The notes beneath the pieces were generated by a model. That model saw only the letters and a list, made by a program, of their open reading frames with translations. It did no database searches and had not been told where the DNA came from. The translations under genes and the position numbers were made by a program. Shown here one piece after another: positions 12,031 to 56,697 of a DNA stretch of 64,000 nt. The first letter of the stretch is position 1, and the number at the start of each line of letters is the position of its first letter. This stretch comes from Phallusia mammillata (taxonomy: Eukaryota), in NCBI GenBank assembly GCA_965637545.1, contig OZ281498.1:17794001-17858000 (forward strand), written 5' to 3'.

Positions 12031-12127
12031 CCACAAATACAAATTAAATCTATATTATGTTTTTCTGTTTCCTATTAATATAAGGGATTGTATTCAGTTT
12101 GCAAAAAATGAAAACCTCAACCTAAAC

Positions 12128-30600: not shown

Positions 30601-30636
30601 GTGTTATTTTCCAATTTTGTAGATCAATACTTGTTT

Positions 30637-35756: not shown

Positions 35757-35835
35757 GCCCAGGGTGGTTTTGGCTGTGGCGAGAATCGAAACCGCGACCT
35801 ACACTGTAACAGGAGCCTCCAACGATCTTCTAGGA
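35757..35835 (-). repeat. Possible tRNA-derived SINE remnant
   Basis: The minus strand has AGGTCGCGGTTTCGATTCTCG (B-box-like) preceded by a degenerate A-box region. Confidence 0.3.
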
Positions 35836-38387: not shown

Positions 38388-38693
38388 CATGGACACCGGA
38401 AAAAATTTTCGCAGAAGGGGCATATTTTGACACATACTTGTGATATTAACTGATAACGTATATATAGGGATAAATTAATCACCGTACAATCAAAACCTGA
38501 AACACTCCGCGAAGAGGTGATGGAAATAACACCAGAAAGTCAAGCATCGTTAGACTCGCTTGTTTAGACATTCACATTCGCTTCTTCACTTCACTTATTG
38601 AACATTCATTAAATTTTTGACAAAATATGTTTATTTTGAGGAAATCCCAAGGGGACAAGTGCAACCTCTTGCTCTTACGTGTCGGCGCCCATG
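38388..38693. mobile_element. Old TIR element (CATGG-type ends)
   Basis: Left CATGGACACCG and right CGGCGCCCATG are imperfect inverted repeats. The flanking 8-mers TGGATAGG/TTGATTTG match 5/8. Confidence 0.35.
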
Positions 38694-39214
38694 TTGATTT
38701 GTCGCTGTTAAGCATTTTATAATTTTGCATTTCTTGTAATTAAACTGAAGTACAACACTTGGTTTCACATTACCACCGTTCTTCGCTTTGATGCGCCTCA
38801 AAAGTTGCGTGCACTTTGAGGTAGCAACAATTACTATGTGTTGACAACCAAATCCCCGCGCTGTAAGGAGAAAATCTCAGTGTTTGCTTTTTGTAACTAC
38901 AGCGAGTTTTTGTATTTGACAATCTCCAGCTGCGTAGTCCCCAAGACCAGCGTAAATTTTTAATGAGCCGCTGCGCCGGTGTTTGGCCCCTGTTTTGTCA
39001 CGTGACTCATTCATTGCTACGTCATATATTGGTGATTAGAATTTATTGTGTCCAGATTAACCCCCTGTGTTGACACGCAATGTGTTTATCTCTGTACACG
39101 TTAGTTAGTTTGCATTGTGACGATTTGCTTACGCACTGCGTTGAAAACAAGAATGTTTGTGTGACCAATGGGTTTGCTATTGATCATCGTACGTTATTCG
39201 GTTAATCTGATGAG

Positions 39215-39611
39215 ACCATGTCAGTAGCTTGTACCCCCTACCCTACTACACTCGTTGTTTGCAAGACGACTGATGATTTGGCCAAATATACACCATTTAA
39301 CACTGGGTGTTGACTGATTCTGATTAGGAAGCTATGTTGCTGCGTCAATTACCCCTACCCAACTACGTCATTGTCTGAATGTTTAGTTGCACAGATGCGT
39401 TATTGCGCAACAGGGATTGAAAGTACGTTGCAAAGCACTGAAAAACGTTACGTGTTGCGCAATAAAGCAACAATACTTCCTAATCAGAATCAGTCTTCCT
39501 AATCAGAACAAAAAGTGTTGAACAATATATATTTGGCCAAATTATGAGTCGTCCTGCAAACAACGAGTATAAAGGTTTAGCAGGGTATAGGCGACAAGCT
39601 ACTGACATGGT
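39215..39611. mobile_element. Foldback or long-TIR MITE-like element (~400 bp)
   Basis: Arms 39215-39341 and 39465-39611 are inverted copies. Outer 18 bp ACCATGTCAGTAGCTTGT is perfect, ACTCGTTGTTTGCA(A/G)GACGACT..ATTTGGCCAAATATA is shared, and 19 bp ACTGATTCTGATTAGGAAG is perfect. TSD not resolved. Confidence 0.8.
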
Positions 39612-41559
39612 TCCATATAAGTTGAAGTGCATTTTTCTTTAAGTTAAAAAAAAGTTTTTTTTAAGTGCGAGTTACAAAAAATGCAAACCATCAACAAAAC
39701 CATTCGCAACTTATATTAATTGTAAAATCATTCGCAAAAAATTTGCCCTTAAAGTAAAAAGTCCCGTAGCTAGTCATAAGTTGTTTCATACAATTCTGAC
39801 TCATTTCCTGGTTTTTCACGCTACGTTACCCACCCGCACCCCCACTCAGACCCCCAAACCCTACCCCTTTGAGAACCGCACCCCTAAATAAACAGTTATT
39901 TACCTAAGAGATTAAAGCAGACCTTTGACAGTTCCCCTCGCTTCGTCAAACGGTATCAAAACACCCAAAAGTGCCCGCGACAGCTGCTATTGGTGCGCAT
40001 TGACGCGTGCAAGATGGTGTGATGCAGCCTTATTCGAGGTCATGACCTTTGAAGTCTTGCTTGCTTAAGTGCTAGTTGGCTGCCAAATCGTGTGGTGGGA
40101 ATGTTTTCGTACGCTTGATTTGCAGAGTGTAAGTGCGCTGCTTTTGAACCATTGTCGCCTTCTCAAGTCTTTTGGTGCTCTCTAATTGCGTGTTTGTACG
40201 CTAAGAACACAAACTCATGGAAAATCGACTGCTAATTGACGAAAAAGACGCTTTGCTTTGGGTTTGGCATGTAAATTATGTAGTTTTTCTTGTTTTTGAA
40301 TTGGTTTCAATTTTGACCTTGTACAGTTGTGAAACATGACCAACTAGATGGGAAATTGTTATAAAAAAATTTAAAAATAGGAGTAAATACGGTGGTTCAC
40401 TGTATATGTTGCTTCAAAAACATTACAAATTATAACACACAAAGTTTTTTTTGTATGGGTCAATTTCTGTGTTGTCTTTCACCCTGTTATTTTGCGTTAT
40501 TCACCATCTAATGTTAACGTACAGACACAATTTTGCATTTGAACTTAGGATAACTTTCACCTAGTTTCGCATAAAAGCCCCGCGCCCTTCATCATACGTT
40601 ATGGTCGACAGCCTTTTTTCATTCATATGCAGCGGTGCGTGTGCTTTGTCTGCTTGCCCAGATTTGGGGATTTTACAGATTAGGACATTTTTTTCTCGGT
40701 CTAATCTTATGCCCTTTTTAAGACTGTGTTGTGTCTGTGACTTGTTTTGAAAAATATTTTTTTTGCAGCTTTTTAAAACTTTACTTGTTTGCTCCCTGAC
40801 AATCTTTAAAGAATAATTGACCGTTAAGTTTATTTCAAATGCTTTGATAGCCTAATTAAATTATATTAGCACCTATGTTTACCCCCAAAGCATGCCAAAT
40901 CGATCCCTAGGGGCAAATTTATGTCAAAAAGTTACCATGTTCCAAATGGATGTAGTGAAAAAAAAAGGCAATGAAGCAACGTTGAACTTTAAACACTTCG
41001 CCACACAGTTGTAGTGGGCATGGAACTGGATCTCGAACCCGTTTTTGCTAAAAAGCCCGAATTTTGCCCTAAAATTAGCAAAACAAAACTGGTGAAAGTT
41101 GTAAAACACAATGCATTAAACGCATCGTTGGAAATAGTAGTACTGGAGCGAAGTAAAGGTGTTATTTTTTGCGATAGTCCATGTAAATTGTGAGATTATC
41201 AATGTAAACATACTACTCAAATCAGAGTAAATGCAACGCCAGACCCGATTCAAACCGTTTTGATCAACATTAACTTTTTCCTGATTCAAAAAGTCAGACC
41301 CGACTTACAACTCTAATTTGACAAGAATTCGTTGCGTAACAAGTTATAGCAGACACAGGCAGACTTGTCAGTCGCAAATCCGCGTGTTATGATTCCAAAA
41401 TCACCTGCGCGACTTGTCATAAAGCCATCAGGTCTTCGACTGTCGCAGCGGAAAAAGGAGAAAACCTCCTTAAAACGCGCTCAGACTCCAAGAATCTATT
41501 AATTCGAGCTCGTCGAAGGCCACCTGCAGGTCATAGTAACAGAATCCAGCCATTTTTCA

Positions 41560-41830
41560 GCAATTCTGTGACTCAAATCGGCCCACGAGCACCTAATCAG
41601 CGTTTGTTATGACATGCTCGCGCTGATTACGCGTATGTTTGTTTCCTTTGCCATTGTGACGTCATAAGGCATTAGTGCGGGCTCCCGAGCTGGCTTGAAG
41701 GGCCGCGCGGCCGCCGGCAATTTACGGAGGTTTATTTTGCTGTTTACTTGTTTGTTGCGGTGCGCATGCGCGTGCAGATTAACCGCGTTTGTGAGAAAAT
41801 GACGGAGCCACCCGGGTTGGACTGTCATTG
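41560..41830. promoter_or_regulatory. CpG-rich promoter-like patch
   Basis: TGACGTCA at 41657, a perfect NRF1-type TGCGCATGCGC at 41761, and GGCCGCGCGGCCGCC. Confidence 0.5.
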
Positions 41831-42536
41831 TTGGCATGAATCAGAATATGTTGTTGCGATGATTTTATGATTGCTTTGAGGTTTTTTATAGGCCGACAAA
41901 TGTTGTCTGAAATTATGGATTGTTTGAGATTTTGTTTGCTTCAACTCTACACGTTGTATTAACCTAACGGAAAAAGGCGAAAGCCTGCGATGAAAAAATG
42001 AGCAGTCACCTGAACAGACATTTGTGTCCATCGTTAATGTTCACTTTGAACTTTTTGTTAAATTACCTTTGCGTAAAGGAAAACCTGCTACATGTAATTT
42101 AAGTTACTTTTAAGTAAAAGAAAACCGATTGCATTAGTATCAATATGTCTCTTGCTATTAACGGTTTGAAAGTTGTGCATTGACAGCGTTGACAACAGTG
42201 GACCGACAGATTAATCTACAAAACCTGATTTTAACGTGATTATATAATAAAGTTCACGACCTAGGAGTTTCATGTTTCGTGATTATACACAAAGCATAAA
42301 AGCAAAACGTACACTTGTCAAACTCAAAATGTTAGCAATCGTGGGCAACTTGGCCATTCTGACAGAGCTAAAGCCACACACAAACACTTTCAGTAATCTA
42401 AGCGTTCGTAGGCAGGCCTCGCGGAAGGTCCGAATATTTTGCCAACAGCAACAACAATATTGCCGCGAATTCCACGGGTTTTGACCTTTCACGTTTACAA
42501 GTCCAAAACTGCCATCAAACTTGACTTTAATCGCCA

Positions 42537-42606
42537 ATGCAATGCACAGTAATGAACACTTCGGCCAGTTTTAATCGTTTCAACCAGGTCCAAAGCTCAA
42601 CAAATG
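42537..42606 (+). CDS. Candidate alternative first exon (MQCTVMNTSASFNRFNQVQSSTN)
   Basis: ATG 42537 (or 42552) after an in-frame TAA. Donor ATG|gtaggt in phase 1. Lies downstream of the CpG-rich NRF1/CRE patch at 41.56-41.83 kb. Confidence 0.22.
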
Positions 42607-45289
42607 GTAGGTTTGGGTTCGGTTAAACTTGCTTCTCGAACTTTGGAGCTTGTGGCTAATGGTTTATGCCACATTGTATGTTTTATTCTTGAGATTATGA
42701 ACGTCGTATAATTCCACACGATTATCCATGTTTTTTGGCTCGAGGCGCGAATTCCTGGTGTATGAAACAAAGTGTTGATGTTGCTTCCGAAAATAGGTAC
42801 AAATTCTTTTCACATAGCTGCTTGTTGTGTTGAGCGATATAGCCTACTAGTTTGAAAGCAGGTTATCGAGGACGTGAAAAATCGCCCAACCTTTTCAATG
42901 CGATGCTTAAATGCCAAACCACGGCACCAAATGTATCTTTTATTAGATAAACCTTTATACATATAGAAAAAATTTCTACATATATCGTGTTACCTTTTCT
43001 AATGTACTTAGGTTTTTATAACATGTGTTTTCAAATAATATAAATTTAATAAATCGTTACCCACCAATCCTAGACTTGCTGTTGGCAGACGCAAACCGTT
43101 CTGTAATACTAGTAGTTGTGTAGTATTAGCGTGACGTGGTGAGTCTACATGCTGTTCCTCGAAATTAAAACATAAACAATAGCTGAATAACCTGTCGCTG
43201 TTTATTTTGCTCGGCCCGCCAACATCCGGGTGACTAATCGGATAGCTTTATCGCTATTTCCTGTCCGCACATTCGGGCCACGTGACTAACGCGACGGTCA
43301 CGTGATTACGCGTGCTGAATCGACCAGTTGCGTTTAGTTGCTAAGAAAATCGGCAAAATCTACGCACAAAAATTCCCAAACGAGTTTACTCCGTATAGTG
43401 TTTTATTTTTGGTTTTAAACTGTTTGGATTTCGAATTTTATTTTGTTGTTTCTGTAGCACGTCTATGTGACGTAGACGTAGTGGCAAGTCTCAAAATGTT
43501 TTTTCAACATGAACGATCTTTAAATTCGGTTAAGCGTTTTGAAAAGCGTATCTTGTTGATTTAGTTTTAGTTTTGCTTCTTTGTCGTTGTTAAATAAAGC
43601 ACACCATAGAATGGAAGCTTTTAACACCAAATTAGGTGGTTTGCAAATTAGAATTAAACGCCCATTCCGTTTAGCCCACTTTTTGCAAGTAAAAAAAACT
43701 TTTCGTTTTCACAATTCTATATGCATTAATATTTTTGCAGCAATACAGCAAAAACTATTCCATTACAACCTTTGCCAAGGCCTTTCTATACCAAGCCCCG
43801 ACTATACTGATGTGTTCACAACACGTTGCGTAAGCCCTCCCTCTGTTGTGATTATTACGACACAGCCAGTGATTGTTGCACGACACGTGATCAATCGTTT
43901 CCGTGTGTGACGTCAGCACCGGATAGTAATTATCCTGTCCCGGCGCGCCAGCCCTTTTTATGAATGAACGCTGCCTGGGAGCCGGGTGATTTAGCACAGC
44001 GTGTATGAAATGCGTGATTTGTGAATGAATGAATTGGCAATTTTTTTGTGAATGAATGATCGGTGCATTGTGTGAGAACAATGGACGTGTCGTGATTTGT
44101 ATCCCCTAAAAATCGTTTGATGGAGCCGTTGGAGTTGGACCAATAAAGCTATGTGATGAAAATATAAACATCCGCTTTTAAGGCCAAGCTGATTTACTTG
44201 TTGAGGGTTATGATACATTAAGTTTGTTTATGCCTTAATTTTCACATGAAATACAAAATGCAATTCATTGGAGTGGCTGATGCTTTTAAACGTGCCTTTT
44301 GATCACAAACTGCTTAACGAACAAAGCTGTGCAAAAAGGTAGCATAAATTATGTCAACATCATGCTTTGGTAGTCCAAAGGAAGTTGTGCAAATCGCGTC
44401 CTCTGAAAACGACCGTTATTACGTCATACACGAAAGGACGCGGCGTTGTCATAGCAGCGATTTGCGCTCAAATCGTGCGATTGCTTGTTAATTGCGTGTG
44501 CACATTTACTGAGCTTCCGCACTTGTTAGAATTTTTGTGTCACTTTTTGTGGGGAACCTGTTTTGGCCTCTCACACCACCTGCAACTTTTTGTTTTCGAG
44601 CTTTTGTCTTCAGTACAGCAGCCTTTGCACCTCTTACGCCTGCCTTTGGCAACTTGCTGATATACGAGACTAAGCGTGCCCTCGACTAACTTTTTGAACC
44701 TTACAAAACTCTTTTATACTGGTTAGTGTTTTTTATAGATAATTCAAATGCATTTCTGGTAAGGATAGGCAAAAAAATAAAGTTAAAAATGTAATAAACA
44801 TTTAAATTAGGCCGTTTTTTCGGTAAAACCTTGCAGATTATGAATCTCTTTAATTAGTTTTGCTTGTCTATTTTTGTTGTACTTGTTTTAGCTCTGTTTG
44901 ACGCGAGGAGTTTTTTAGTTTAGCGGCCTTTTTTTAGCACTAGTGGTTCGGTTTTGGCAAAACTAATCGAAAACAGATATTAGTAGCAGGGTGGAGGGCG
45001 TCGAGTCAGATAATGATCACGCAATACACATGTCAAGCATCCGGTCTTAGCTGTCAATCAAAACGCAGAAATTGTCAGACGCTTCTTCCTCTACTGGGAA
45101 CGTTGCACCTATTTGCTAGAACCAGTTAAATTAAACGAAGCCAATTGAAAGAGAAATTACCATTAGCTGTGTTGTGAATATCGGTCACGTTATTAACGCG
45201 TCGGCATTGCTAGCCAAATTCTGACCCCAGACTTAGGACACACTTCTGGGCCCAACCGGACTTGTATGTCACGATTTCGTGACTGTAGC

Positions 45290-45550
45290 GCGCTTGACCA
45301 ATCCCCACACTCACTTGTGATTGGGTAGTTATGATATGACGCGCCGCCCATTGACAATTTTTCAGCGTTTTTTTTTGTTACTCCCTTCAGTACCCGTTTC
45401 GTCAGATGACAGATAAGGCGGTTTTAAAGTCTCAGCTGCAGTCATTTGCTATGTAGCACACGTCCAGGTGGTAAACAAAGGAGTATTCGTCGCATTTTTC
45501 TTGGAGTTCGTCAGCAGGGTCAAACGAGGCTTAAATCATCGGATGCGAGG
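45290..45550 (+). promoter_or_regulatory. Candidate internal promoter and 5' exon
   Basis: Opposed CCAAT boxes (GACCAATC, GATTGG), TGACGC and GCCGCCC, ending at the consensus donor at 45550. Confidence 0.4.
45543..45549 (+). CDS. Candidate alternative first exon end (ATG CGA G|gtgagt; Met-Arg)
   Basis: Perfect consensus donor GAG|GTGAGT at 45550, in phase 1 relative to the ATG at 45543. Preceded by CCAAT boxes and a GC box at ~45295-45350. Confidence 0.35.
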
Positions 45551-48474
45551 TGAGTAGGAATACGAATTTGCTGCGCAAACATATTTTTTGTCAGTAGCGT
45601 GCTTGCGTCGCGTCGACGACGACATCTGCTTGTTTAATATTTGATGCGGAGGTAGAATCCCATGAGAGGTTGTGTTTTGTCAATGGGGTCGCGTCCTTCC
45701 AGCTTGCGTTGTTTTGAGCTGTACTGACGTGAGGGTGGCCACCATTTCCGATTTAATCTGCTGAGGCAAAAAGGTGTCGAAAATCGACTGTATATGTATT
45801 TTAGTTATTTATCTACAGCATCTTATATGTAACAGCCATATTGTGTCGTGATTAATCCTGTTTACAGTAGCACTTGTTGCAAATCCACCCAAAACGTTTT
45901 TTGGGGCGTTTGTTTAAACATTTTTTCGCTAAAATTGCTGGTACAGGATACTCAATTGCTCTCAAAAAGCACGTTTAAGTTTAACAGACCATGCTTAAAA
46001 TTTCATGCAAAACTAAAACTGGGATCGGCTCTGTTTAAAAAAATGCATTTGCAACGATTGTTAATTTCTGGTCATTATGGATCTTGTACTTATAACATTG
46101 GTCGTGACGTAGGAATTTTATGGTATATTTCATATACGGTAAAACAGACTGTACAAAAACCCTTCAACGACGCCCATTTTGTCGCTGTTTTTATAGCTGT
46201 CGAGCTGTCGTAAAATATCCTGTGACTCACAAATTTTGACCTCGCGTATGCCGACCCTTGCTTAGTTTAAATTAAAACAAACGTAAATCCATTTCACCTA
46301 TCGTGAGAAGACCGTGCGTTTTTCAGCTTGTCCTATCGATTTTAGGCCGTAAAACTTTGCGCTGACGTCAAAATAGTCGTTTCGCTGACGTCCAATGGTC
46401 GTTTTCAAATGCGACAATCGCCTTGTCTGGCGCATTGTTTCCACCAACCCAGACACTAGAACATTGTGCGTTAGATCATAAACGATATGTTAAGGCCAGT
46501 GGCCGCAGTGCCATGACCTTTTAAGCCAAAACCTTTGTTAGATCGTCGCCTTTACCTTGTTTGGACCGATAATAACTCCTAATTTGTACTTTTGCGCTCT
46601 AAAATTCATGTGAGTTTTGGAGAAGGGATATAGTGACATTACTTTTTTGGCGTGGTAAAATGCCCAGAAATTATGTTTTTCAATCTGATGTAATGTCTGG
46701 ATGCCTTATCTTTTGAGTTGTTTATAGGTCAATCTACCGCTTTGTTAATATTGAGGTCAATTTACAAATAAAGAAGTTATACAAACATGATTCATGCGGA
46801 CTAAAGTTACAACATTTAATGTGAAAGCTTAGCAACACCAATTAGGATTCCAAACGAAGCCCTTAACTTCGTAAGCTATTTAATAGAAAAAATATTTTTT
46901 ATGCTGAAAAATCTTTTGTTCAAAAGCAGTAAAAGAGGGAAATGCTTTTGAAGTTTGCTATTATGATTTTATCGCACTTCTTACTTAAAAATGAGGACAA
47001 AAAAAACATTTTTAGTGAACATAAATTAGTTGAGAAAACATATCTGATTGTAACATTTCTTGAAGTGTTCCATGTTTAATATTTGGAAAGCGTAATTACA
47101 ATTCTTCCAACGTTTTCCGTTGTTTAAGAGTTTGTCATGAATCAACAAAAATTTATAGGAAGTTAGTCATAAAATTGTTTTATATTGAGCATTCTAAATT
47201 AGCTTATTTTCGTTTTATGACTTTACACATCATTTGTCTGTCTGTAGCACTTTAATAGCGTTTTGTTCTTGTGGAAATTGATGTTATTCGTGCGATTTAG
47301 GAATTCAAAACGTCACAATTTCCAATTTTGTCATATGATAATGGAATATGAAATTGGAACTAGTCATTATGGTAATTAAAGTGTTGCTGCTAAATGAAAC
47401 ATTTGTTACTAAAAAAGGATCTTATTTGTAATAAAGTCAGAATAACTGTTTTAGTGTGGGTTATAAATTTCCTTTGTGTGGTGGTCGTCGCTTTATTAAT
47501 CTTATTGTACAATTGGTCGTACTAAATCCGTTAGCATTTACGCTGATTTTGTTGTAACTTGGTGTTATTGTGAAGAGTTTTTACAAGCAAAATATTTGTT
47601 TAAAAGTATCTGCTACCAGCTGGCTTTTTATTGTTGATTTAATGGCTCATCTTAGAAAAATGCGAAATCGCTCACCTACTATTCATGTCTGTGTTGACGA
47701 ACTGCGATGACCGGTTTGTGTAAATATTGTGCAGAAGCTTTGAAATCCAAAACATCATCTTTGATTTTTTTGTCTTTTTATACTTGCGTTAGGTCACGTA
47801 TAGTTATTTGTTTGCTTATCTTAAAAACTAGCACTGGTATTTCTAGCTGATTCCAAAGGTTGACAGTGCTAAACTGGTTTAAAAGCCATTGCGCGCGTAC
47901 AAACTTAACGATAATCCTATTCTCATACAAATAGGTATCAACAGACTTAACATCCTGGCCAAAGAAACGCAAGCGCAATGTATAGGCAATACTTATCCAC
48001 TCGCGTTTCCCACATTTGGCTTGTTTTTCTCGAAAACTAGCGACCGAACAAGCTATGGCAATGTCCACAATCCTTTAATCTACCTTCTATTCACCCACTG
48101 TTGTGAGACTATTTATAGAAATCTCGTTCCAAAAACGTGTGTAACAAACCACGGAAACTACAAGCATTTGCCGCGCTGTTTATTGCTGTGCAAGTCATGG
48201 CCCTGCATTAAACCCAGGATGCATCACATTTGTCGCCCATTAATCGCCTAAACAACGCGCCGTCGTTGTCGACAAATTGGCTCTAGTGAGAAAATCGCTT
48301 AACAGGGCTTTGTGGCTACGCCGTTTAGTCGCAAATGAACCCGGGTTCTTACGAAACCTTAACTTGGCACGATTACTCAACGTGCGAGATCGTCTCAAAA
48401 AGAGCTTTACGGATAATGCCTTGATGCCTCGTCGGTTCTGTGTAGGATTCATCTCTTGAGTTTCGCATTCAAGC

Positions 48475-48975
48475 ATCGGACCAATCGCAGCTCACCAGTG
48501 TGGGCGTTCCCCTTGACGCGCTCCACTGACTTTCGCACGTGATTGACATCATAAGAAAACATTTCTGCAGACGGCCCACAAACTGAACCGCAATGCCCTG
48601 CAGGATATTCCCCATATTTCAGTGCAATTTGTCAGCGAAGAGCATTGCATCAGCAACACGTACCCGAAAACTCCTATAGCAGTGACGTTATACGCGAGAA
48701 ATCTCCCCTTCTGACAAAAATAATCGAATGCAAGTTCCTTTCCCCCGAATGTCACTTAGTTTCGAATCTGTGTAGCACTTTTCCGGTTTACGACCCGCGC
48801 CGTTAACCTCCTGACGTCACCTAGGGGGTCCTGTGACGTCGCATCGTCACGTGACATCCGACGTGTACTGGAGAATGTTGTTTTGCAGGCGGCTCTCCTA
48901 TTGCGTGTAACCTTGCTGTTTACTCAAGCTGAAAGGCAAACACGTTCCGTTTCAGGTTGCAGATCACGTGACTGT
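48475..48975. promoter_or_regulatory. CRE/E-box/CCAAT cluster
   Basis: GACCAATCG, GCACGTGA, TGACGTCA at 48812, GTCACGTGAC at 48847 and ATCACGTGAC at 48964. Confidence 0.45.
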
Positions 48976-51899
48976 GCCGTAAATAGCCTTTTACCTGGAA
49001 TCGCGAGTTCGTCTTGGTTAACGATTCAACTTTGCTCTTGCGGGTTTGGTCGCTTCTTGGCCTCGCAGAAATGTTTGTGTGTTGAAGCCCTTTACGATAT
49101 TTGATCTTTTGCACACTTACGCTGTGCCGCGTGAACTCGGAAAAATCTTGTTTTGTATCGAAAGCCTTTCACAACGAGTGGGGCTGCGTTTGCTTTAGAG
49201 TACTGTGTATATATTGCTGTACAATTTTTTTAATTTTAAAATCGACCTACAAAATATCATTTTGTCAAAAACATCTGCAGACATTTCAGATTTTAAATGA
49301 CCTTGTTTAAACGTTGAAATGGGCTTGTAGTTTCCTATCAATATTTTAGTTTTTTCGACGAAGGTTCCTGCAAGTCTTTTTGTGACTGTTTTGTTACGTT
49401 TGAGCTTCAGTTCGGTTATGTGATCTATGACATGTTACCAGCGATCAGGGTCGCATCAATGCCCAAAAACGTTTTCTAGTGTTACAAAATTGCACGTTAT
49501 TTTGAACAACAAAGACAAACAAAGTGCGTACAAGTGTTGGCAAATAGTCATGTGACCAAAGACGTTGCGTCAATATTTGCCACGTCAGAGGTCGACTCCT
49601 AATCGGGAACCCAAGTGAGAAAATCCTTACTTAAACAATCGACACTTCATCGCCTACTACACCTTTAGTGTTTAAAGCGTTTCGCACTAGCTACTGTCAA
49701 AGGCGTTAACCCTAGCGCCGAAAACCGGCTTTTTGCCTTATCTGTTATCACTGCTAGATAGCATGTGCGTAGGAAGAGCACAATGTATGGCGTTGTACGT
49801 TCCCAGTTCCTTTTAATACGATGCCAGTGATTGTTTAGTCGAACTCGCGCTTTTCCCTTATCTCTGGTCTCTTCTACGCTCTCGTTTATTGGCCTAGTTT
49901 GATTTTTTGGTGGAAACATTTTCGTTGATCAAAATCGAAAGTGACTTACCTTTAAAAAAAAGATGAAGCTTCTATCAAGTTTATAGATCATTTAAACTTT
50001 CTCTATGATTTTCTTTTTGCGAGAAAAAAATTTGTGACAAGATACTAATGTGACTTTGTGCGTATACAATTTTAAACGCATTTACAAATAAGCAAATTTG
50101 TGCTTTTTTGCCATTTAAAAATAGCAAAACTGGACCGTTCAGTCAAGCAAAACCGGTGGAATAGGTAATATCCGTTGATTTTCAGACAGTGCCTTCCATC
50201 GGAAATGCCTCGGCGGCTAAAATGGCTCGAATACCCCTAAAATTCTATTTGTTGTGTTATTGTCTGATATGTGCTCTGTAAACTGGTTAAAATTCGTGGT
50301 AAATACGCATCGAGCAGTTTCGAAAATATTTCTGAAAATATGATTTGTTGTTATGTGCGATTGGGCGATCACATGGTACGACGAAACATTTCTCCTCTCG
50401 TTGGCTGGTGCGTTACGTCATTATGACGTCAGAAGTAGCCCCTCTTCAATTTTGCGGTTTCGCAATTTTACGTGCACAAATGGGAATGCACTGAAAATAT
50501 ACGGCCCAATACAGATTTGTGCGACTTATATAGACATGGGCCGACGCGTCACAATTTGTTATTGTGTCACATTGCTAAAATGCAAGAATAAGTGTTTGTT
50601 CTATACCCAGAACAGTGTGGCAAAATACTCCGTAAAATCGCTTATATTTTTCCAAGTGTGTATTTCAAGCAACTCGTTAGTTTGTTTTCATTCAAAGCTG
50701 GTTAGCAAGGTACCTAATTCTTCCAATCAGACGCAATGACGCAATTCATACCCTAATTTTTCTTCAGCATGTTAATTTAACTGAAGCTATACCCACTTTA
50801 GTACGTTGATTCTTGTTGCATTGTCGATAAACTAGTGGAAACTTCAACCTTTTCACGAACTCCCACCAAAAAAGCATGCTACCTCACACAATGTTTTGTC
50901 CATTTATCAACGTTTTGTATGCGTAGAGTCTAACCCGATAAACCAACTGCGGTATGACGTGAGGCAGGAATTAAATTCCCGTTAAATAATTAACTTTAGT
51001 TTTTTTCCGGCATAATTAACCGCAAATTTATTTGATTTTTGTATTTCGTGGTCGCTCTAGTTGTACCTGACTTCCTGTCCTTACATACGAAAATCAAAGA
51101 ATGTTAAATTCGCATCTAGGGACTTGTGATTGACGGCGTTTGTGTATTTTTCATCAAATGGGCTTTTTCTCTTATTTGAAGCTGGATTCGACATTTCAAA
51201 CACGGAAGCCAACCTCTTTCGTCATACAGTTGTCGGATTTAATGTACTAAAAATGTAACCTTATGCAAGTCCTGACGACGGTTTCCAATTACGCACTTAT
51301 TCCAATCAGGTAGTGACGTCATGTTGCGCTTATGACGACACACTCCCGCCTTAAGTCTCGAAAGGGAAGTAAGACTATTCGGTCATTGCGGGAAAATTAC
51401 ACTTTCGTTTGTTGAGCAAAAAATCCCGCCTATGATGAGTAACTAGAGTAAGTACAAGGACGCGGTTCTTTTCTCCATTTCGGTATAACAAGGCACAAGT
51501 GCGGGGCGTAGGCGTATGTGTAACTTTTCTGTGTGTATTCGTCTCATTTATGAAGACAATGAATCAGAATTTTATAAAAGATTTTCCACTTTAGAAATCA
51601 CGTTTACTAAACCACTGACTTTTTCACGGAAAGTTATCAACGTTAATTTTTACGTATTACTACTAGGTGATACGACTTTTAATGAAGACTGGGCGTAATC
51701 CATACTTTCACCATTCTCCGACGCATAAAACACAATAAAAAATAAAATTATAGATATTTTGGTACCAATTTCTACGGTAACAGCATGTGTTTCTGGTTTA
51801 ACGAAAGTGTGCTTTAAAAACTCGTGTATTTTAGCCAGAATCGCTGCAACTTGGGCAAAATCGCATTAACATTGAAAAGCGATGGAACCTCGCAGAAAA

Positions 51900-52120
51900 C
51901 GAATCGCTACCGAAAAAATGGTCCTATAAGACCGAGCCATTTTCCTTGTCCTCGCGTTTGACCAGCAGAAGGTGGTGTGTGTGCGCGCGCCATGGCGCAT
52001 GTGCACGCGTGTGTCGACGCACGCCCTTTTTTTTCCCTCACCGGACGTCGTCATTGAAAGAGGCGGGCACTGGGCTTCGGTGCTGGATATAAGGCTTTGC
52101 TGGGCTGTGAAGGCTAGGTT
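51900..52120 (+). promoter_or_regulatory. Candidate internal promoter just upstream of the ACK C-terminal exon block
   Basis: GC-rich patch with GCGCGCGCCATGGCGCATGTGCACGCG (NRF1-like), a GC box AGGCGGGC near 52063 and a TATA-like GATATAAGG at 52086. Confidence 0.45.
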
Positions 52121-52635
52121 ATTCTTACCGGTCTCTTGTCCGCGACCATCAAGTCTTAGGTTTGTTCATTGTAAGGCTTTGTATTGTATTGGCGCGACGC
52201 AGAGAGCATTGAAATTGGGTTTGGCATGCGGAATTGCATTACTCGCGGATTTTATTGGCGTTGATGTATCAGCTCGACAGGGCGATGACGTTGGATTATT
52301 GCGTTATTGGACAGCAGTTAGCCGTTAGTGTCGAACCCTAATTCCGGTTCAAGACCCAAAAATTGCGTTTTTGCCTTAGAGGACGAAACATGCAGGTTTA
52401 AAAAGGTTTAAGTAACAGTGTTTAACTCAAGTTTCTTTGTTCTGTCTATTTTCCTTTTGGAATCAATTGGTAACGGATATATATGTGATTATGTGTTGTT
52501 TTGAAACAGGCTTTACATACATAAGATAGGAAAATTAGCCTTAGTGACGCCAAATGCTGTGGCAAACTGGAGTGTACAGTGCCAAATTGTCTTGTGAAGT
52601 CGGTCGGGTGCTATACACCAACTAACACACCGAAA

Positions 52636-52684
52636 ATGAAGCTCAAAACTATGTACGCTTGCCTTAACCGAAGAAGTACCACTG
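52636..52684 (+). CDS. Candidate alternative first coding exon (MKLKTMYACLNRRSTT) for a kinase-less ACK isoform
   Basis: aaaATG at 52636 with an in-frame stop upstream at 52522. Donor CTG|gtaggt in phase 1 lies 252 nt before the phase-1 acceptor at 52937. There is a good acceptor ttttgaaacag| at 52509 and a promoter-like patch at 51.9-52.1 kb. Confidence 0.45.
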
Positions 52685-52936
52685 GTAGGTAAACGAGCGG
52701 AAGCTATAACGCCTGGACTGTTGTATTTACTGTAGCCAGCTGATTCAACTGTGTGCTACACATGCGACTATTTAAGGCGATTTAGGGAGGTGTTTTTTGT
52801 TGTTAAAAGATTGCGTTGTGGTTGTTTTGAGTCGTTGACTGATGGTGTGTTGCTGAAATAGGTTGTTTTAAGTTGGTGTGCTTTAAAACTTGACAGGTGT
52901 TTAGATTCGGTTTTCACACTTTGTTTTGTTTTGTAG

Positions 52937-53018
52937 AGACACCCTTTGAACCCAGCGACAAAAAATCTTATCAACAAACTACCAAGTTACAAAAGCCTAA
53001 CAAAAAGGCCGCATTCAG
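52937..53018 (+). CDS. TNK2: ACK-like kinase, first exon of the C-terminal block
   Basis: Acceptor ttgttttgtag| and donor cag|gtaagc. 82 nt, phase 1 in and phase 2 out, translating (E)TPFEPSDKKSYQQTTKLQKPNKKAAF(R). It links the reading frame to exon 53098. Supported by splice signals and phase, not by homology. Confidence 0.8.
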
Positions 53019-53097
53019 GTAAGCCATTTAGTTAAATATTATCAAAATAAAATATACTTCAATAAACAAATATTTAATCATACAAATGTGCTTACAG

Positions 53098-53333
53098 GCC
53101 AAAGTGGCAAACGCCCTCAAAGTCCAAAACAGCGACTAAGAACGAAGACGACGATAGTACCCCGCCTTCGGATCTCCACTCTCCGCCGGCAAACTCACCT
53201 CAGATCCCCGCACAAGTCGATACACGAACCCGATCTAAGTCGGCCCGCTTACCCCTGCCGGCGAGTTGCCAGACCACTGGTGGATCAGCCCCTACCTCTC
53301 CTTCCGCCATCTTGGATCGGCGGTCTCTTCCAG
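53098..53333 (+). CDS. TNK2: ACK-like kinase, Pro/Ser-rich exon
   Basis: cttacag| ... cag|gtaaat, 236 nt. The frame PKWQTPSKSKTATKNEDDDSTPPSDLHSPP...ILDRRSLP is open with phase 2 in and phase 1 out. This is a different frame from the ORF-track call at 53088. Confidence 0.85.
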
Positions 53334-53422
53334 GTAAATTTTTAAACCAACCCTAATCTCTTTAAGTTGTCAGTAAGTTTTTGCTAAGGAATCTTTAATA
53401 ATGTGTTGTGTTGTTACGTCAG

Positions 53423-53544
53423 GTGAACTGCCTTCCCCTATCAAGCCGTTGGACAGTATGGCAAACCCCTTTGGCTCGATGCCAGAAGTTCGAACGGACG
53501 AAAATTGCAATAGAGAATGGAAACACACGTTCGACAAATCACAG
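53423..53544 (+). CDS. TNK2: ACK-like kinase exon containing an NPF motif
   Basis: tacgtcag| ... cag|gtagaa. Translates (G)ELPSPIKPLDSMANPFGSMPEVRTDENCNREWKHTFDKSQ. Phase 1 in, phase 0 out. Confidence 0.85.
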
Positions 53545-53659
53545 GTAGAAACACCTGCCAGTTGCACTGCAATATACTTAACTAAAAACTCGAAACAATA
53601 AAGTTACTCGAAACCCGCTTTTGTGTATACTTTACTAAAAGCGATGCATGTATCTACAG

Positions 53660-53771
53660 GACAGTCCACCCTTCGTTGCATCTTTTCCTCGATACGATCC
53701 AGTGGCTCCTGACCCGGTGACACGTGATGACGTGTTCTCACGAAGTTCTCCTACCTGGTCAAACGGTGGAG
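53660..53771 (+). CDS. TNK2: ACK-like kinase exon with YDPV motif
   Basis: tctacag| ... gag|gtcagt. Translates DSPPFVASFPRYDPVAPDPVTRDDVFSRSSPTWSNGG; YDPV resembles ACK1 TYDPVSED. Phase 0 in, phase 1 out. Confidence 0.87.
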
Positions 53772-53965
53772 GTCAGTATAATACAATTCTGACATATATA
53801 ATAACTTCTTGTCTGGGCAAAATACTGATTCGAACGATTGGATTTTTTAAAATACACAGAGATTTTAGTATGTAAACTATGTATTAAGTGAATTAACTAT
53901 TTGTGTCTTTCTCATATTGGTAAAATTGGCATTGTTAATCAATTAAAACCTTGTGTCTTCAACAG

Positions 53966-54735
53966 CTGACAACTCGTGGGATAAACGGTTTCCAACTAGC
54001 GTGGGCGAATCCGATGACGGGACGGTAAAACTACTGAAAGCCCTTAAGCTAAGTTCTCTTCAACAACAAGCAATGAAAGACTCACAGTCATCGCCCGCCC
54101 AGCAATTTGGTGGTGACGAGTTTGAGGACTTAAAAAACGAGATGATGAAACAATACGGTTTTGTCGGCCTACAAGGCGCCGTGGCGTTTGCGCCTCGTAC
54201 CGAATCAGGCGCTACAATGGATAGTTTATCATCGATGTCTTCATCCACATCAAGCCTCGTTACATCGTCTGCTGAACGAACCGCGGCGCCTTTTGAGCCC
54301 GTAAGGACATTTTGCGATGAACACAAGTCCACCGTCACTACCTGGTCAACTGATTTTCAAACTGACTCACATGCGCCATCAAGTGCCGCGATCCCTCGCC
54401 GGGCGTTTTCGACGTCCGCAAAGGAAGTAAAATGGAGCGAAATTCCTCCTTTAATCCCTCCGCGGGAGCCGGTACGTCATCCCCGGAGCTCTCCACCTCA
54501 GCGTCACTCTTCCACTCCGTCGCCTACGTCAACGTCACCCGTAACCATGGGAACAAAGACTCCCTCTCCCGTACCACCGACGTCAAGACCGAAATACCAG
54601 ACGCAGTCGTCGACCACCACTGTGTTTTCGGCCCTTCCTCCTAGCATGACCAGCTCAAACCCGGTTATCCTACCTATTATGAAGGATGGGAAGCAGGAAA
54701 GCCACACGCATTACTATCTCCTACCTGAAAGCAAG
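53966..54735 (+). CDS. TNK2: ACK-like kinase, large exon with the MIG6-homology (EGFR-binding) region
   Basis: caacag| ... aag|gtaaat, 770 nt open. Contains PPLIPPREP (54445-54471) and ILPIMKDGKQESHTHYYLLPE (54667-54729), matching ACK1/MIG6 PPxVPPREP and CILPIxxxGKKVSSTHYYLLPE. Confidence 0.95.
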
Positions 54736-54943
54736 GTAAATTTAGGTTTACCAGTTTGAAGTTTGCAAATTTTGCAACTGTGACCTCATGAAAACTGTTT
54801 TTAAGAATTTTTTTTCGTCCAACATGTATCTTAATTTCCGAATTAATCTTTTTTTTTCAAACCCGTGAACCTATTACGGTAATAAAAATGATGCAATTAA
54901 GGGTCAATTTCACTTTTCTAAATTCCTGCTTTGTTTTCAACAG

Positions 54944-55115
54944 TCCGCCGCTGCGAAAAACCAACGTAGCCAACAGAAGTACGAACCAGCGAACGGAATT
55001 GCTCGACCCACACCCTCAGCACGGGTGGCGCCCTTCAACCGCTCGACGGGCGCACCCCCGCCACGCCCACCTCCACCCACCAGCACCACCTTCACACCGT
55101 TCACTGCATCTTTAG
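54944..55115 (+). CDS. TNK2: ACK-like kinase, proline-rich exon
   Basis: ttttcaacag| ... tag|gtgagc. Translates SAAAKNQRSQQKYEPANGIARPTPSARVAPFNRSTGAPPPRPPPPTSTTFTPFTASL. Phase 0 in, phase 1 out. Confidence 0.88.
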
Positions 55116-55305
55116 GTGAGCTAAATTCGATTTTGTGTCTAAACATGCTAGTGTCTGATGATTTCGAATACTTTTAACGGGCTGCAGACCGTGTAGCTTT
55201 AGGTGAATGAGTTAAAATGAGTTAGAAAACGATGAAAATGATACCTTGCTATAAGATTTATGGAAAAAAACTCTGTTTCTTAACGTTACATTTTTTCTTA
55301 TTTAG

Positions 55306-55568
55306 CGCCAGAACGGTCCTCACCCAACCATCTTTCACCTTTATCAACTTCCAACCCGGCTTCAACCTATCCACCGCGCCGTAACGCTGTTTCTCAAAGC
55401 ACGAACTCATCCTTCCACGCTCGTTCGACCCCGAGATATTCGGAGATGGGCCGCGGGGAAAAAGTCGTGGCTGTCCAGGGTGAAGTCTTCGGCGTTACCG
55501 ATGAAGAATGCCGATCAGCGCTGCGACTTAACGAGTGGGATGTGCCAAAGACCATAAACTACCTTAAG
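55306..55568 (+). CDS. TNK2: ACK-like kinase, exon with the first part of the UBA-type C-terminus
   Basis: ttatttag| ... aag|gtgtgt. Ends KVVAVQGEVFGVTDEECRSALRLNEWDVPKTINYLK (ACK1: [28 protein letters not shown]). Confidence 0.93.
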
Positions 55569-55708
55569 GTGTGTTTCACTTTAAACTCATTTAATGTAAA
55601 AAATACCCCTTTTCAATAAGAAATAATGATGTTTTGATTTATATTTGAGTAATAGTTTGAGAATTTTCCTCAATTTAGGCAAAAAACTAAAACGCTTTTT
55701 TTCATCAG

Positions 55709-55831
55709 GTCGAACAGTTGTTCCGTATTGGCGTTGCACCACGTGACGTATGCCAGCACATCCTCCAATCAACGTCGTGGAATTTACAAACCGCGTCACG
55801 TGTTCTTCTTGAACAGCATTGCCGCAGATAG
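55709..55831 (+). CDS. TNK2: ACK-like kinase, terminal coding exon (UBA-type region)
   Basis: tttcatcag| then VEQLFRIGVAPRDVCQHILQSTSWNLQTASRVLLEQHCRR* (ACK1: [34 protein letters not shown]). Stop TAG at 55829-55831. The 11 exons sum to 2248 nt, i.e. 1 nt plus 749 codons. Confidence 0.95.
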   Translation, partial: VEQLFRIGVAPRDVCQHILQSTSWNLQTASRVLLEQHCRR

Positions 55832-56697
55832 TCTCCTTTGACCTTTGAACCCGTCGGGTGCTAAAATTTCTCATTCTGTCGACTGCATTTGGCAAAATCA
55901 TCGTTGGAGCTGATCTTATGCGATTTATTACTGAAAAGTGCAAAGCAGTTAGTGGTGTGTGGGCGCGTGGACGCCGGGCCCGGGTGGAACCAAAGTACCT
56001 CAATTACTGTGAAGTGTTGCGTGCCGGGCGACAGGGCCGATCGCGTCGGTAATACTAAGCCACTGTTTCGTGAAGTGATTGTTTCTCTTTTCGCCGCATC
56101 CTTGCAATCATAGTCCCTATGTTTTCACAAGTCCCCATCGCATTGATGTCGTCGCTGAACAAAAAAGAAGAACGGCTTTTACTGCCTAATAATATTCTGC
56201 CCCGATGATTAAAAATAGACTTTCAGCGCCACGTGAATGATACGATTAACTGCTCAGCCCTTCTATTTTATTTTTCTTCGCAGTTTTTAAGTTATTGCAA
56301 AAAGTCTTTGTTTTTATTCCCTTATGTGTTGACGACCTCAGCCCCTATTAAGTCTATAGCGTCCAAGCGAGCCGGTTTTCGAGTCGTTTACCTAACTTGT
56401 ATTTTTCGTCGCCCACTTCCTTTTTGCAGTATTGCTATATCGTTGTTGTTTTTTTCTTTTATAATATTTCTGTTCTAAGTATGACTCTATTTTTTTCCTT
56501 CTCGTTCCGCACCCACAAAATTCTCTTTTTATCAGTTTACCAAATGGCAGCGGAATACAAACATTAAACTTTCAACATTGTGCTGTTGCTAGAAGACAAC
56601 GTTAGAAGGAGTAGTTTCAAGTTCTGGAAAAAAATTAAGATATGAGACACGCATATTTTAGGATCTTCTACATCAAACTTTTATAGATAGATGTACC

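What the first reader, a model, noticed from the sequence alone, without database searches (positions are those of the whole stretch)
51900..55831. Internal promoter may produce a kinase-less, MIG6/ERRFI1-like protein from the ACK locus
Seen: a promoter-like patch (51.9-52.1 kb), an acceptor at 52509, then aaaATG 52636 and a phase-1 donor at 52685 that splices in frame onto exons 52937-55831. The sum is 1929 nt, a 642-aa protein lacking kinase, SH3 and CRIB but keeping NPF, PxxP, the MIG6-homology region and UBA. Established: vertebrate MIG6/ERRFI1 is a kinase-less, inducible feedback inhibitor of EGFR that shares this region with ACK1. Inference: a non-vertebrate chordate could make a MIG6-like inhibitor from the unduplicated ACK gene via an internal promoter, a possible ancestral state of the ACK1/MIG6 pair.
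Basis: partly seen in the sequence, partly recalled or inferred. Interest (0 to 1): 0.78.

Follow-up and report, generated by a model that had tools for sequence, protein, structure and literature searches.

The report
Kinase-less ACK isoform in sea squirts
This sea squirt's ACK tyrosine-kinase gene also makes a shorter mRNA that starts at its own small exon inside a 44-kb intron and encodes only the non-catalytic tail (MIG6-like region plus UBA); the same dedicated start exon is conserved in seven other tunicate sequences, so it looks like a real, selected non-kinase product.

Summary

**RNA evidence**
- Spliced contigs from four public runs carry all seven downstream junctions.
- One run (X1) carries the predicted 52684^52937 junction.
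- Another run (X3) shows the canonical junction 8650^52937, which spans a 44-kb intron.

**Gene identity.** The gene is an ACK/TNK2 orthologue. The window starts inside its SH3 domain, so the kinase exons lie upstream of the window.

**Conservation**
- The 16-codon start exon (MKLKxMYAC...) recurs in seven other tunicate sequences. In three genomic loci, counting this window, it is 49 coding nt ending in a phase-1 GT donor.
- Five of the seven are transcript contigs with kinase-less ORFs that carry only a UBA domain.
- One of these contigs begins with the Ciona spliced leader.
- Invariant residues are encoded by varying synonymous codons, which indicates selection on the peptide.

**Promoter.** An internal promoter is likely but not shown. 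TATAAG lies at 52088, a contig starts at 52116, and a G+T-rich stretch of about 0.4 kb follows that looks like an outron.

**MIG6 comparison.** MIG6-like function is untested. Only MIG6 segment 2 (THYYLLPE) is conserved. The isoform lacks CRIB and keeps the UBA, so it resembles FRNK or telokin more than MIG6.

The parts
383..457 (+). ACK SH3-domain exon piece. The window begins inside the ACK gene; the kinase exons lie upstream of the window.
   Evidence: tblastn of Ciona intestinalis ACK (P0018, XP_026694587.1) aa 354-378 gives 76% identity. The ORF reads [23 protein letters not shown]. No kinase motif occurs anywhere in the window.
651..758 (+). ACK CRIB (Cdc42-binding) exon.
   Evidence: tblastn of P0018 aa 383-418 gives 72% identity. 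The ORF reads [20 protein letters not shown].
8481..8650 (+). Last exon of the full-length form before the long intron (LYLNNPMEPPDL...). Its donor is 8650|8651, phase 1.
   Evidence: Sequence read. tblastn of P0018 aa 419-438 gives 85% identity. The X3 loose end in front of 52936 equals window 8620-8649.
8651..52936 (+). 44.3-kb intron of the full-length ACK transcript. It holds the alternative start exon at its 3' end.
   Evidence: Canonical junction 8650^52937 in X3. The homologous intron in Ciona intestinalis is 8.1 kb, L006 19995-28127.
51950..52115 (+). GC-rich promoter-like patch with TATAAG at 52088-52093.
   Evidence: Sequence read. GC is 0.50. TATAAG lies 28 nt before the start of the X3 contig at 52116, which sits on a T|A dinucleotide. 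Ciona TATA boxes sit at -32 to -29 and TSSs prefer CA/TA (PMC4691747). No RNA contig covers 51200-51987 in any of the 4 runs.
52116..52509 (+). Putative outron: transcribed leader removed by spliced-leader trans-splicing. Alternatively a long 5' leader.
   Evidence: Low-depth unspliced contigs cover 52116-52337 (X3, depth 3.9) and 52182-52391 (X1, depth 5.2). G+T is 0.599, in the top 1.3% of same-size windows of the 44-kb intron. This matches the G+T-rich, roughly 450-nt outrons described for Ciona. The reading is an inference.
52510..52684 (+). Alternative first exon. The 5' boundary is uncertain: acceptor 52509|52510, acceptor 52544|52545, or a TSS after TATATAT at 52479. The coding part is 52636-52684 (MKLKTMYACLNRRSTT plus 1 nt).
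   Evidence: The X1 contig covers about 52548-52684 and joins to 52937. The peptide is conserved in 7 other tunicate sequences with synonymous codon variation. A uORF lies at 52554-52625.
52937..53018 (+). First shared exon (E2). It is entered in phase 1 from either 8650 or 52684.
53098..53333 (+). Shared exon E3 (PKWQTPSKSK...).
   Evidence: Junctions in 4 of 4 runs. PKWQP is conserved in relatives.
53423..53544 (+). Shared exon E4. It contains LPSPIKP and the species-specific NPF.
53660..53771 (+). Shared exon E5.
53966..54735 (+). Shared exon E6 (256 codons). The MIG6-homology region is at about 54511-54729 (IPPREPVR ... PVILPIMKDGKQESHTHYYLLPE).
   Evidence: phmmer against PDB finds ERRFI1 peptide 4ZJV_C, E 1.2e-4. 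A profile of nine tunicate sequences matches 4ZJV_C segment 2 only, E 6.3e-7.
54944..55115 (+). Shared exon E7, proline-rich (APPPRPPPPT).
55306..55568 (+). Shared exon E8, first half of the ACK-type UBA region.
   Evidence: PDB 8THA/8FZ3 (human ACK1 UBA fusions), E 5e-3. Pfam UBA_4 hit is weak.
55709..55831 (+). Last coding exon, second half of the UBA region. The stop codon TAG is at 55829-55831.
   Evidence: PDB 8THA/8FZ3, E 7e-7. Pfam UBA_4/UBA_8, E 2e-4.
55832..56560 (+). 3' UTR, at least this long.
   Evidence: The X1 contig runs unspliced from 55707 to 56560.

Best explanation
The ascidian ACK (TNK2-like) gene has a second transcription unit nested at the 3' end of its 44-kb intron.

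**How it is made**
- Transcription most likely starts at an internal TATA promoter: TATAAG at 52088, TSS near 52116.
- The leader of about 0.4 kb is probably removed as an outron by spliced-leader trans-splicing, at an acceptor at 52509 or 52544.
- The small dedicated first exon (ATG 52636, 16 codons, phase-1 donor at 52684) is then spliced to exon 52937 and the eight shared exons.

**What it encodes**
- The product is a 642-aa protein without SAM, kinase, SH3 or CRIB.
- It keeps the proline-rich adaptor region, the MIG6-homology region (segment 2, THYYLLPE) and the UBA domain.

**Likely function.** By analogy with FRNK (from FAK) and telokin (from MLCK), it most likely acts as a non-catalytic competitor or regulator. 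It could occupy partners of ACK's tail, or bind a tyrosine-kinase domain through the MIG6-homology region. That kinase could be ACK's own or EGFR's.

**Shown:** the splice junction in RNA, the in-frame ORF, the domain content, conservation of the start exon in tunicates, and spliced-leader capping in one relative.

**Inferred:** the promoter and TSS, trans-splicing in this species, translation, and any inhibitory function.
For: **Junction and frame**
- Junction 52684^52937 appears in an RNA contig of run X1, depth 66.9 against 91.6 for the common contig.
- The common contig breaks at exactly this exon.
- The frame and the 1929-nt sum were checked.

**Relatives**
- L001 (Logan ERR6338309) begins GGG plus ATTCTATTTGAATAAG, which is the Ciona spliced leader (PMC1488885 Table 1). 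A 96-nt UTR follows, then MRLKNMYAC... in frame with a 598-aa kinase-less ORF.
- L002, L003, L004 and L005 carry the same start with upstream stops or a conserved N-terminal extension.
- Pfam finds only UBA on these ORFs. It finds kinase, SH3, CRIB and UBA on full-length Ciona ACK.

**Genomic copies of the exon.** Each has 49 coding nt and a phase-1 GT donor, in front of the homologous shared exon.
- Ciona intestinalis: L006 28002-28050.
- An ascidian metagenome contig: L008 1736-1784.

**Codon pattern.** Leu3 is invariant but encoded by four different codons. Lys4, Tyr7, Ala8 and Cys9 vary mainly at third positions.

**Promoter pointers**
- TATAAG lies 28 nt before the contig start at 52116, and nothing is laid on 51200-51987.
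- The putative outron's G+T is in the top 1.3% of intron windows.
- In Ciona, TATA sits at -32 to -29 and outrons average about 440 nt with G+T-rich starts.
- In Ciona, trans-splicing prefers the first functional acceptor after the TSS.
Against: - The alternative junction was seen in only 1 of the 4 runs laid, as a single contig. Contigs show neither strand, nor ends, nor reliable level.
- That contig starts at about 52548. This matches neither candidate acceptor exactly and shows no spliced leader.
- Run X3 has the 52116-52337 contig but no alternative-exon contig. That piece may therefore be something other than the outron of this mRNA.
- The 20 unaligned letters in front of 52116 in X3 were not displayed. 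They could be an adaptor, a spliced leader joined at AG 52116-52117, or an upstream exon.
- Non-coding similarity of the promoter patch to Ciona (CTCACCGGACG; TAAGGCTTT) is not above chance.
- There is no protein-level evidence.
- MIG6 segment 1 is not conserved in tunicates.
Confidence: 0.72

Rival explanations
1. There is no internal promoter. The short mRNA is cut out of the full-length ACK pre-mRNA by spliced-leader trans-splicing onto an acceptor inside the 44-kb intron. On this reading isoform choice is a splicing decision, not a transcriptional one.
For: A relative's mRNA is leader-capped. PMC11155486 reports that trans-splicing in Ciona can occur at an acceptor that has a paired upstream donor, and does not exclude single-promoter models. 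No TSS was observed directly.
Against: - In Ciona, trans-splicing is preferentially at the first functional acceptor after the TSS, and outrons are mostly under 500 nt. This acceptor would lie many exons and at least 44 kb downstream of the ACK TSS.
- TATAAG sits 28 nt before a contig start at 52116.
- The intron just upstream (51200-51987) is uncovered while 52116-52391 is covered.
- Runs X3, X6 and X13 express the full-length form without the short one. This suggests separate control.
Confidence: 0.18
2. The 52510-52684 segment is a poison cassette exon of the full-length transcript. It would be spliced between 8650 and 52937, shift the frame and trigger decay, so no kinase-less protein would be made.
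For: A usable acceptor lies at 52509 and another at 52544. Inclusion would add 175 or 140 nt, neither a multiple of three, and bring in-frame stops. The X1 contig does not reach the 5' end of the exon, so its upstream partner is unseen.
Against: - Five transcript contigs of relatives start with this exon, and their 5' UTRs carry no ACK upstream exons. One is leader-capped.
- The peptide from the ATG onward is conserved with synonymous variation, while the sequence before the ATG is not. A poison exon has no need for this.
- The coding segment is exactly 49 nt with a phase-1 donor in all three genomes.
Confidence: 0.05
3. The transcript is real but functionally neutral, or is not translated from the MKLK start. 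It would be transcriptional noise from an intronic element.
For: There is no protein evidence. A uORF (52554-52625) precedes the ATG if the exon starts at 52510 or 52545. The junction was seen in one run only.
Against: The start exon, its length and its phase are conserved across lineages whose non-coding DNA no longer aligns. In X1 the alternative contig's depth is of the same order as the shared contig's. The ATG has A at -3.
Confidence: 0.05

Closest known systems
FRNK (FAK-related non-kinase), made from an intronic promoter of the FAK/PTK2 gene. Likewise PRNK from PYK2 and telokin/KRP from the MLCK gene. This comparison rests on my own knowledge, not on a tool result.
   Same: In each case a kinase gene also expresses its non-catalytic C-terminal region on its own. 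The transcript starts inside an intron downstream of the catalytic exons, uses a short dedicated 5' exon, and is in frame with the shared exons. The product is expected to compete with or regulate the full-length kinase.
   Different: The kinase family differs: here it is ACK/TNK2. The 5' end is probably made by spliced-leader trans-splicing, which vertebrates lack. The tail carries a MIG6-homology region and a UBA rather than a FAT or Ig domain. Neither the promoter nor an inhibitory function has been demonstrated here.
MIG6 / ERRFI1, the vertebrate feedback inhibitor of EGFR.
   Same: Both are kinase-less proteins that carry the region shared with ACK1. Segment 2 (ILPI..GK...THYYLLPE, with the two tyrosines) is conserved: E 1.2e-4 for the window exon and 6.3e-7 for the tunicate profile against PDB 4ZJV chain C.
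   Different: - It is an isoform of the ACK gene, not a separate gene.
- It lacks the CRIB that MIG6 retains.
- It retains the UBA that MIG6 lacks.
- Segment 1 is not matched by the tunicate profile.
- Pfam Inhibitor_Mig-6 is not reached.
- Inducibility and EGFR binding are untested.
Full-length ACK1/TNK2, for example Ciona intestinalis XP_026694587.1 and human ACK1.
   Same: It is the same gene with the same C-terminal exons. The MIG6-homology region and the UBA are those of ACK. In ACK1 the MIG6-homology region both autoinhibits the kinase and binds EGFR (PMC10047419).
   Different: The short form has no SAM, kinase, SH3 or CRIB. It has a conserved 16-residue N-terminus of its own (MKLKxMYAC...) that is absent from the full-length protein.
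Spliced-leader trans-spliced mRNAs and alternative promoters of Ciona (PMC1488885, PMC4691747, PMC11155486).
   Same: The 16-nt leader sits on the homologous mRNA of a relative. Outron length, G+T richness and TATA position all fit the published description.
   Different: In this case the acceptor lies deep inside another transcription unit of the same gene, and its use changes the protein's domain content.

Membership tests
ACK/TNK2 family gene (the locus) | SH3 domain C-terminal to the kinase, followed by a CRIB/GTPase-binding region | tested here: met
   Window 383-457 and 651-758 match Ciona ACK aa 354-418 at 72-76% identity. Pfam GTPase_binding and SH3 fall on that part of the Ciona protein.
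ACK/TNK2 family gene (the locus) | Tyrosine-kinase domain | not testable with these tools
   No kinase motif occurs in the window, because the window starts inside the SH3 domain. RNA contigs of X3 and X6 extend about 1.7 kb upstream of exon 52937, but their letters were not available.
ACK/TNK2 family gene (the locus) | C-terminal MIG6-homology region followed by an ACK-type UBA | tested here: met
   4ZJV_C, E 1.2e-4. 8THA/8FZ3 human ACK1 UBA, E 7e-7 and 5e-3.
MIG6/ERRFI1 (the short product) | Separate kinase-less gene | tested here: not met
   The product shares all but its first exon with the ACK gene.
MIG6/ERRFI1 (the short product) | N-terminal CRIB domain | tested here: not met
   The CRIB exon (651-758) lies upstream of the alternative start. 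Pfam finds no GTPase_binding on the kinase-less ORFs of relatives.
MIG6/ERRFI1 (the short product) | Segment 2 with the YY motif (substrate-site binding after phosphorylation) | tested here: met
   PVILPIMKDGKQESHTHYYLLPE aligns to 4ZJV_C residues 44-70. The tunicate profile gives E 6.3e-7.
MIG6/ERRFI1 (the short product) | Segment 1 (binds the EGFR C-lobe; Phe and PKY) | tested here: inconclusive
   RPKY is present in this species and aligns to DPKY, but the Phe position is not matched. Ciona has KPKH. The nine-sequence profile does not align to segment 1.
MIG6/ERRFI1 (the short product) | Pfam Inhibitor_Mig-6 (PF11555) match | tested here: not met
   No hit at E up to 1 on exon 6. No hit at E up to 0.01 on four kinase-less ORFs or on full-length Ciona ACK.
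MIG6/ERRFI1 (the short product) | Binds and inhibits EGFR; induced by growth-factor signalling | not testable with these tools
   This needs co-immunoprecipitation, a kinase assay, and expression profiling after stimulation.
FRNK/telokin-type autonomous non-kinase isoform | mRNA starts within an intron downstream of the catalytic exons, with a dedicated first exon in frame with the shared exons | tested here: met
   Junction in X1. Frame checked. Leader-capped or complete 5' ends without ACK upstream exons in L001-L005.
FRNK/telokin-type autonomous non-kinase isoform | Own promoter in the intron | tested here: inconclusive
   TATAAG at -28 of a contig start, the upstream intron uncovered, and a G+T-rich 0.4-kb leader. 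No TSS data were available.
FRNK/telokin-type autonomous non-kinase isoform | Product antagonises or regulates the full-length kinase | not testable with these tools
   This is inferred from the known autoinhibitory role of the ACK1 MIG6-homology region (PMC10047419).
Spliced-leader trans-spliced mRNA | 16-nt leader ATTCTATTTGAATAAG at the mRNA 5' end | tested here: inconclusive
   Met for the homologous mRNA L001 (leader sequence in PMC1488885). Not seen for the window's own species: the X1 contig stops at about 52548 and the loose ends there were not listed.

The most novel reading that the evidence does not exclude
In tunicates the single ACK gene also does the job that MIG6 does in vertebrates. 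The conserved kinase-less isoform would be an endogenous pseudo-substrate inhibitor of EGFR and/or ACK, acting through segment 2. The vertebrate ACK1/MIG6 division of labour would then have arisen by partitioning a two-promoter ancestral gene after duplication.
Probability: 0.12. Interest if true: 0.85.

Novelty: new member of a known kind. Interest (0 to 1): 0.6.

Why it matters
ACK1/TNK2 is a cancer-relevant kinase, and its tail both autoinhibits the kinase and binds EGFR. A naturally expressed, evolutionarily conserved tail-only form would be a built-in regulator of that pathway, as FRNK is for FAK.

Ciona is an experimentally easy chordate in which to test what the MIG6-homology region does when free of the kinase. 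Electroporation, CRISPR and TSS-seq resources already exist for it.

It also bears on how vertebrates came to have a separate kinase-less gene (MIG6) that shares this region. The domain mismatch (no CRIB, UBA kept) argues against a simple precursor relationship.

In practical terms, the isoform is missing from the NCBI Ciona intestinalis models seen here. X1-X3 are full length, and newer models split the gene elsewhere. Annotations of ascidian ACK genes should therefore add it.

Tried and rejected
- **Kinase exons in the window.** Motif scans in all frames found none. The window starts in the SH3 domain.
- **Pfam on single exons.** Only weak UBA hits and no Inhibitor_Mig-6. The MIG6 homology had to be shown against PDB chains instead.
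- **Bacterial promoter/terminator scan.** Irrelevant for this eukaryotic locus.
- **CpG observed/expected.** It is about 1 across the whole window, so CpG islands are uninformative, as published for Ciona.
- **Non-coding conservation of the promoter patch.**
  - A global alignment with Ciona is uninformative.
  - The best local matches, CTCACCGGACG and TAAGGCTTT, are collinear but are reached by 18 of 500 shuffles and 9 of 72 other intron pieces.
  - Against the closer genome contig L008, only coding exons align.
- **Literature.** Four searches of the paper library found no description of a kinase-less ACK isoform or of MIG6 outside vertebrates. This is absence in that library only.
- **P0010.** This 757-aa vertebrate-like tail-only model could not be traced to a contig.
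- **Possible leader on L004/L005.** Both share a TTTTGATTT... start that might be another lineage's leader. I did not claim it.
- **Joined 642-aa model.** Exons were searched singly by reference.
- **Caps.** The 5' end of the exon and the loose letters at 52116 could not be re-examined.

Full report
**1. What is at the coordinates**

- ATG is at 52636.
- The first coding segment is 49 nt, ends at 52684 and is followed by GTAGGT (phase 1).
- The acceptor is at 52936|52937.
- The exons are 52937-53018, 53098-53333, 53423-53544, 53660-53771, 53966-54735, 54944-55115, 55306-55568 and 55709-55831.
- The total is 1929 nt, or 642 aa. My first pass mis-read the 55568 boundary; the corrected one restores the frame into VEQLFRIGV...

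The last two exons match the solved UBA region of human ACK1 (8THA/8FZ3, E 5e-3 and 7e-7). The end of the 256-codon exon matches the ERRFI1/MIG6 peptide co-crystallised with EGFR (4ZJV chain C, E 1.2e-4). Pfam on single exons gives only weak UBA hits and no Inhibitor_Mig-6.

**2. The locus is ACK, and the window starts inside it**

No kinase motif exists anywhere in the window. The beginning of the window does hold the following:
- an SH3 piece (about 383-457);
- the CRIB exon (651-758);
- an exon at 8481-8650 (LYLNNPMEPPDL...).

These were confirmed by tblastn with Ciona intestinalis ACK (XP_026694587.1) at 72-85% identity. The kinase exons therefore lie upstream of the window. The closest named relatives found here are Ciona intestinalis and C. 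savignyi, at 50-85% identity, so this is a different ascidian.

**3. RNA evidence in this species**

Twenty public runs hold the stretch. Those holding about 45-49% of its words carry it spliced. I laid four runs from four studies on 51200-57100.
- All seven junctions downstream of 52937 are present in all four runs.
- In X3, the 30 letters in front of 52936 are identical to window 8620-8649. The full-length mRNA therefore joins 8650 to 52937 across a 44.3-kb intron, in phase 1.
- In X1, one contig (depth 66.9) runs from about 52548 to 52684 and continues at 52937. This is the predicted junction.
- In the same run, the common downstream contig (depth 91.6) begins at 52936, the G that both upstream exons share just ahead of exon 52937. 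An assembly graph does this where two upstream paths converge.
- In X3, X6 and X13 the contigs run straight through the canonical junction, so the short form is absent or rare there.
- Contigs give neither strand, nor true ends, nor reliable levels.

**4. The same start exon in other tunicates**

An exhaustive protein search with the 256-codon exon gave 14 hits. One of them, P0009, lies on a 2272-nt transcript contig, L001.
- L001 begins GGG plus ATTCTATTTGAATAAG. This is the 16-nt Ciona spliced leader (PMC1488885 Table 1).
- A 96-nt UTR follows, then ATG MRLKNMYACVVTRRSET..., in frame with a 598-aa ORF that ends in the UBA.

Word and profile searches and contig look-ups added four more transcript contigs.
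- L002 starts MKLKSMYAF... with an in-frame stop upstream.
- L003, L004 and L005 contain ...MKLKNIYAC... preceded by a conserved extension of about 30 residues.

Pfam finds only UBA on these ORFs. It finds kinase, SH3, GTPase-binding and UBA on full-length Ciona ACK.

Two genomic loci show the exon in place, just upstream of the homologous shared exon.
- Ciona intestinalis: L006 28002-28050, MKLKGMYTCVTRGVDS plus G|GTAAGT, 77 nt before the shared exon and inside an 8.1-kb intron.
- An ascidian metagenome contig: L008 1736-1784, MKLKAMYACVNRRPAT plus G|GTACGA.

In all three genomes the coding part is 49 nt and phase 1. Across the eight sequences, Met1, Leu3, Lys4 and Tyr7 are invariant, and Leu3 uses four different codons. 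Lys4, Tyr7, Ala8 and Cys9 vary mainly at third positions. The UTRs do not align. This is the signature of selection on the peptide. It rules out a chance ORF and makes a poison exon very unlikely.

**5. How the 5' end is made**

Leader capping in L001 means the mature 5' end is a trans-splice acceptor.

The published Ciona data say three things (PMC11155486, PMC4691747):
- trans-splicing is preferentially at the first functional acceptor after the TSS;
- outrons average about 440-460 nt and are G+T-rich near the TSS;
- TATA boxes sit at -32 to -29, and initiation prefers CA/TA.

The window fits this picture.
- TATAAG is at 52088.
- A low-depth contig (X3) starts at 52116 on a T|A step, 28 nt downstream.
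- A second low-depth contig (X1) covers 52182-52391.
- Nothing covers 51200-51987 in any run.
- G+T over 52116-52509 is 0.599, in the top 1.3% of equal windows in the intron.

I therefore favour an internal TATA promoter with an outron of about 0.4 kb. The caveats are as follows.
- X3 has that piece but no alternative-exon contig.
- The 20 unaligned letters before 52116 were not shown.
- A second TATA-like run (52479) lies 30 nt before 52510.
- Promoter-patch similarity to Ciona is not significant, and L008 aligns only in coding exons.

**6. What the product is like**

It lacks SAM, kinase, SH3 and CRIB. The following are conserved among the tunicate short forms:
- PKWQP;
- LPSPIKP;
- FEDLKNE..YGF;
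- IPPREPVR;
- PVILPIMKxGKQxSxTHYY;
- a PPRPPPPT run;
- the UBA.

The NPF is specific to this species. A profile of the tunicate MIG6-homology region matches only segment 2 of MIG6 (E 6.3e-7), and segment 1 is not conserved.

In ACK1 this region both autoinhibits the kinase and binds EGFR (PMC10047419). The best-supported functional guess is therefore a non-catalytic competitor or regulator of ACK and/or receptor tyrosine kinases, in the manner of FRNK or telokin. The comparison with FRNK and telokin rests on my own knowledge.

It is MIG6-like only in being kinase-less and carrying segment 2. It lacks MIG6's CRIB and keeps a UBA that MIG6 lacks. This weakens the simple 'ancestral state' reading.

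**7. Novelty**

The searches of the paper library found no description of a kinase-less ACK isoform. The NCBI Ciona intestinalis models seen here are either full length (X1-X3) or split the gene elsewhere, and none starts with MKLK. Community Ciona models could not be consulted. The kind of thing, a non-kinase isoform from inside a kinase gene, is well known. This instance appears to be new.

**8. Step left out**

Noticed in passing
window 56705-56880: A short element just beyond the ACK 3' UTR is covered at a summed depth of 1,500-15,000 by dozens of different RNA contigs in all four runs, with many diverging flanks. It looks like an expressed interspersed repeat (SINE-like).
   Followed up: no
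window 61144-61686 (+): An intronless ORF of about 170 aa starts MGNSCSG... and carries WDTGGQ and NKRD motifs. By eye it is an ARF/ARL-type small GTPase gene downstream of ACK.
   Followed up: no
window 8651-52936 versus L006 19995-28127: The intron that hosts the alternative exon is 44.3 kb here but 8.1 kb in Ciona intestinalis. In both species the exon sits at the very 3' end of the intron, 252 nt and 77 nt before the shared exon respectively.
   Followed up: partly
L006 (Ciona intestinalis AP043567.1:7605429-7644331): Newer NCBI models split the ACK gene in two. XP_078493480.1 (640 aa) runs from the kinase to an exon read into an intron. XP_078493508.1 (436 aa) starts inside the large exon. 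Older models X1-X3 are full length. None uses the MKLK exon at L006 28002.
   Followed up: partly
L003, L004, L005 (JGI metatranscriptome contigs), first 180 nt: In one tunicate lineage the ORF extends about 30 residues upstream of MKLK with a conserved GKNIDLANII..LKRRYAA segment, so there the MKLK methionine is internal. L004 and L005 also share a TTTTGATTT... 5' end that might be that lineage's leader.
   Followed up: partly
window 52554-52625: A 23-codon upstream ORF lies in the 5' leader of the alternative exon, out of frame with the main ATG. It is relevant only if the mRNA starts at 52510 or 52545.
   Followed up: no
window 52037-52047 and 52090-52098 versus L006 27598-27608 and 27722-27730: CTCACCGGACG, and TAAGGCTTT next to the TATA, occur in the same order upstream of the alternative exon in both species. 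The match is not above chance by shuffling.
   Followed up: yes
window 58431-58830 (-): Two tandem copies of a unit with long T/A runs give repeated ORF text on the minus strand. This is probably a repeat.
   Followed up: no
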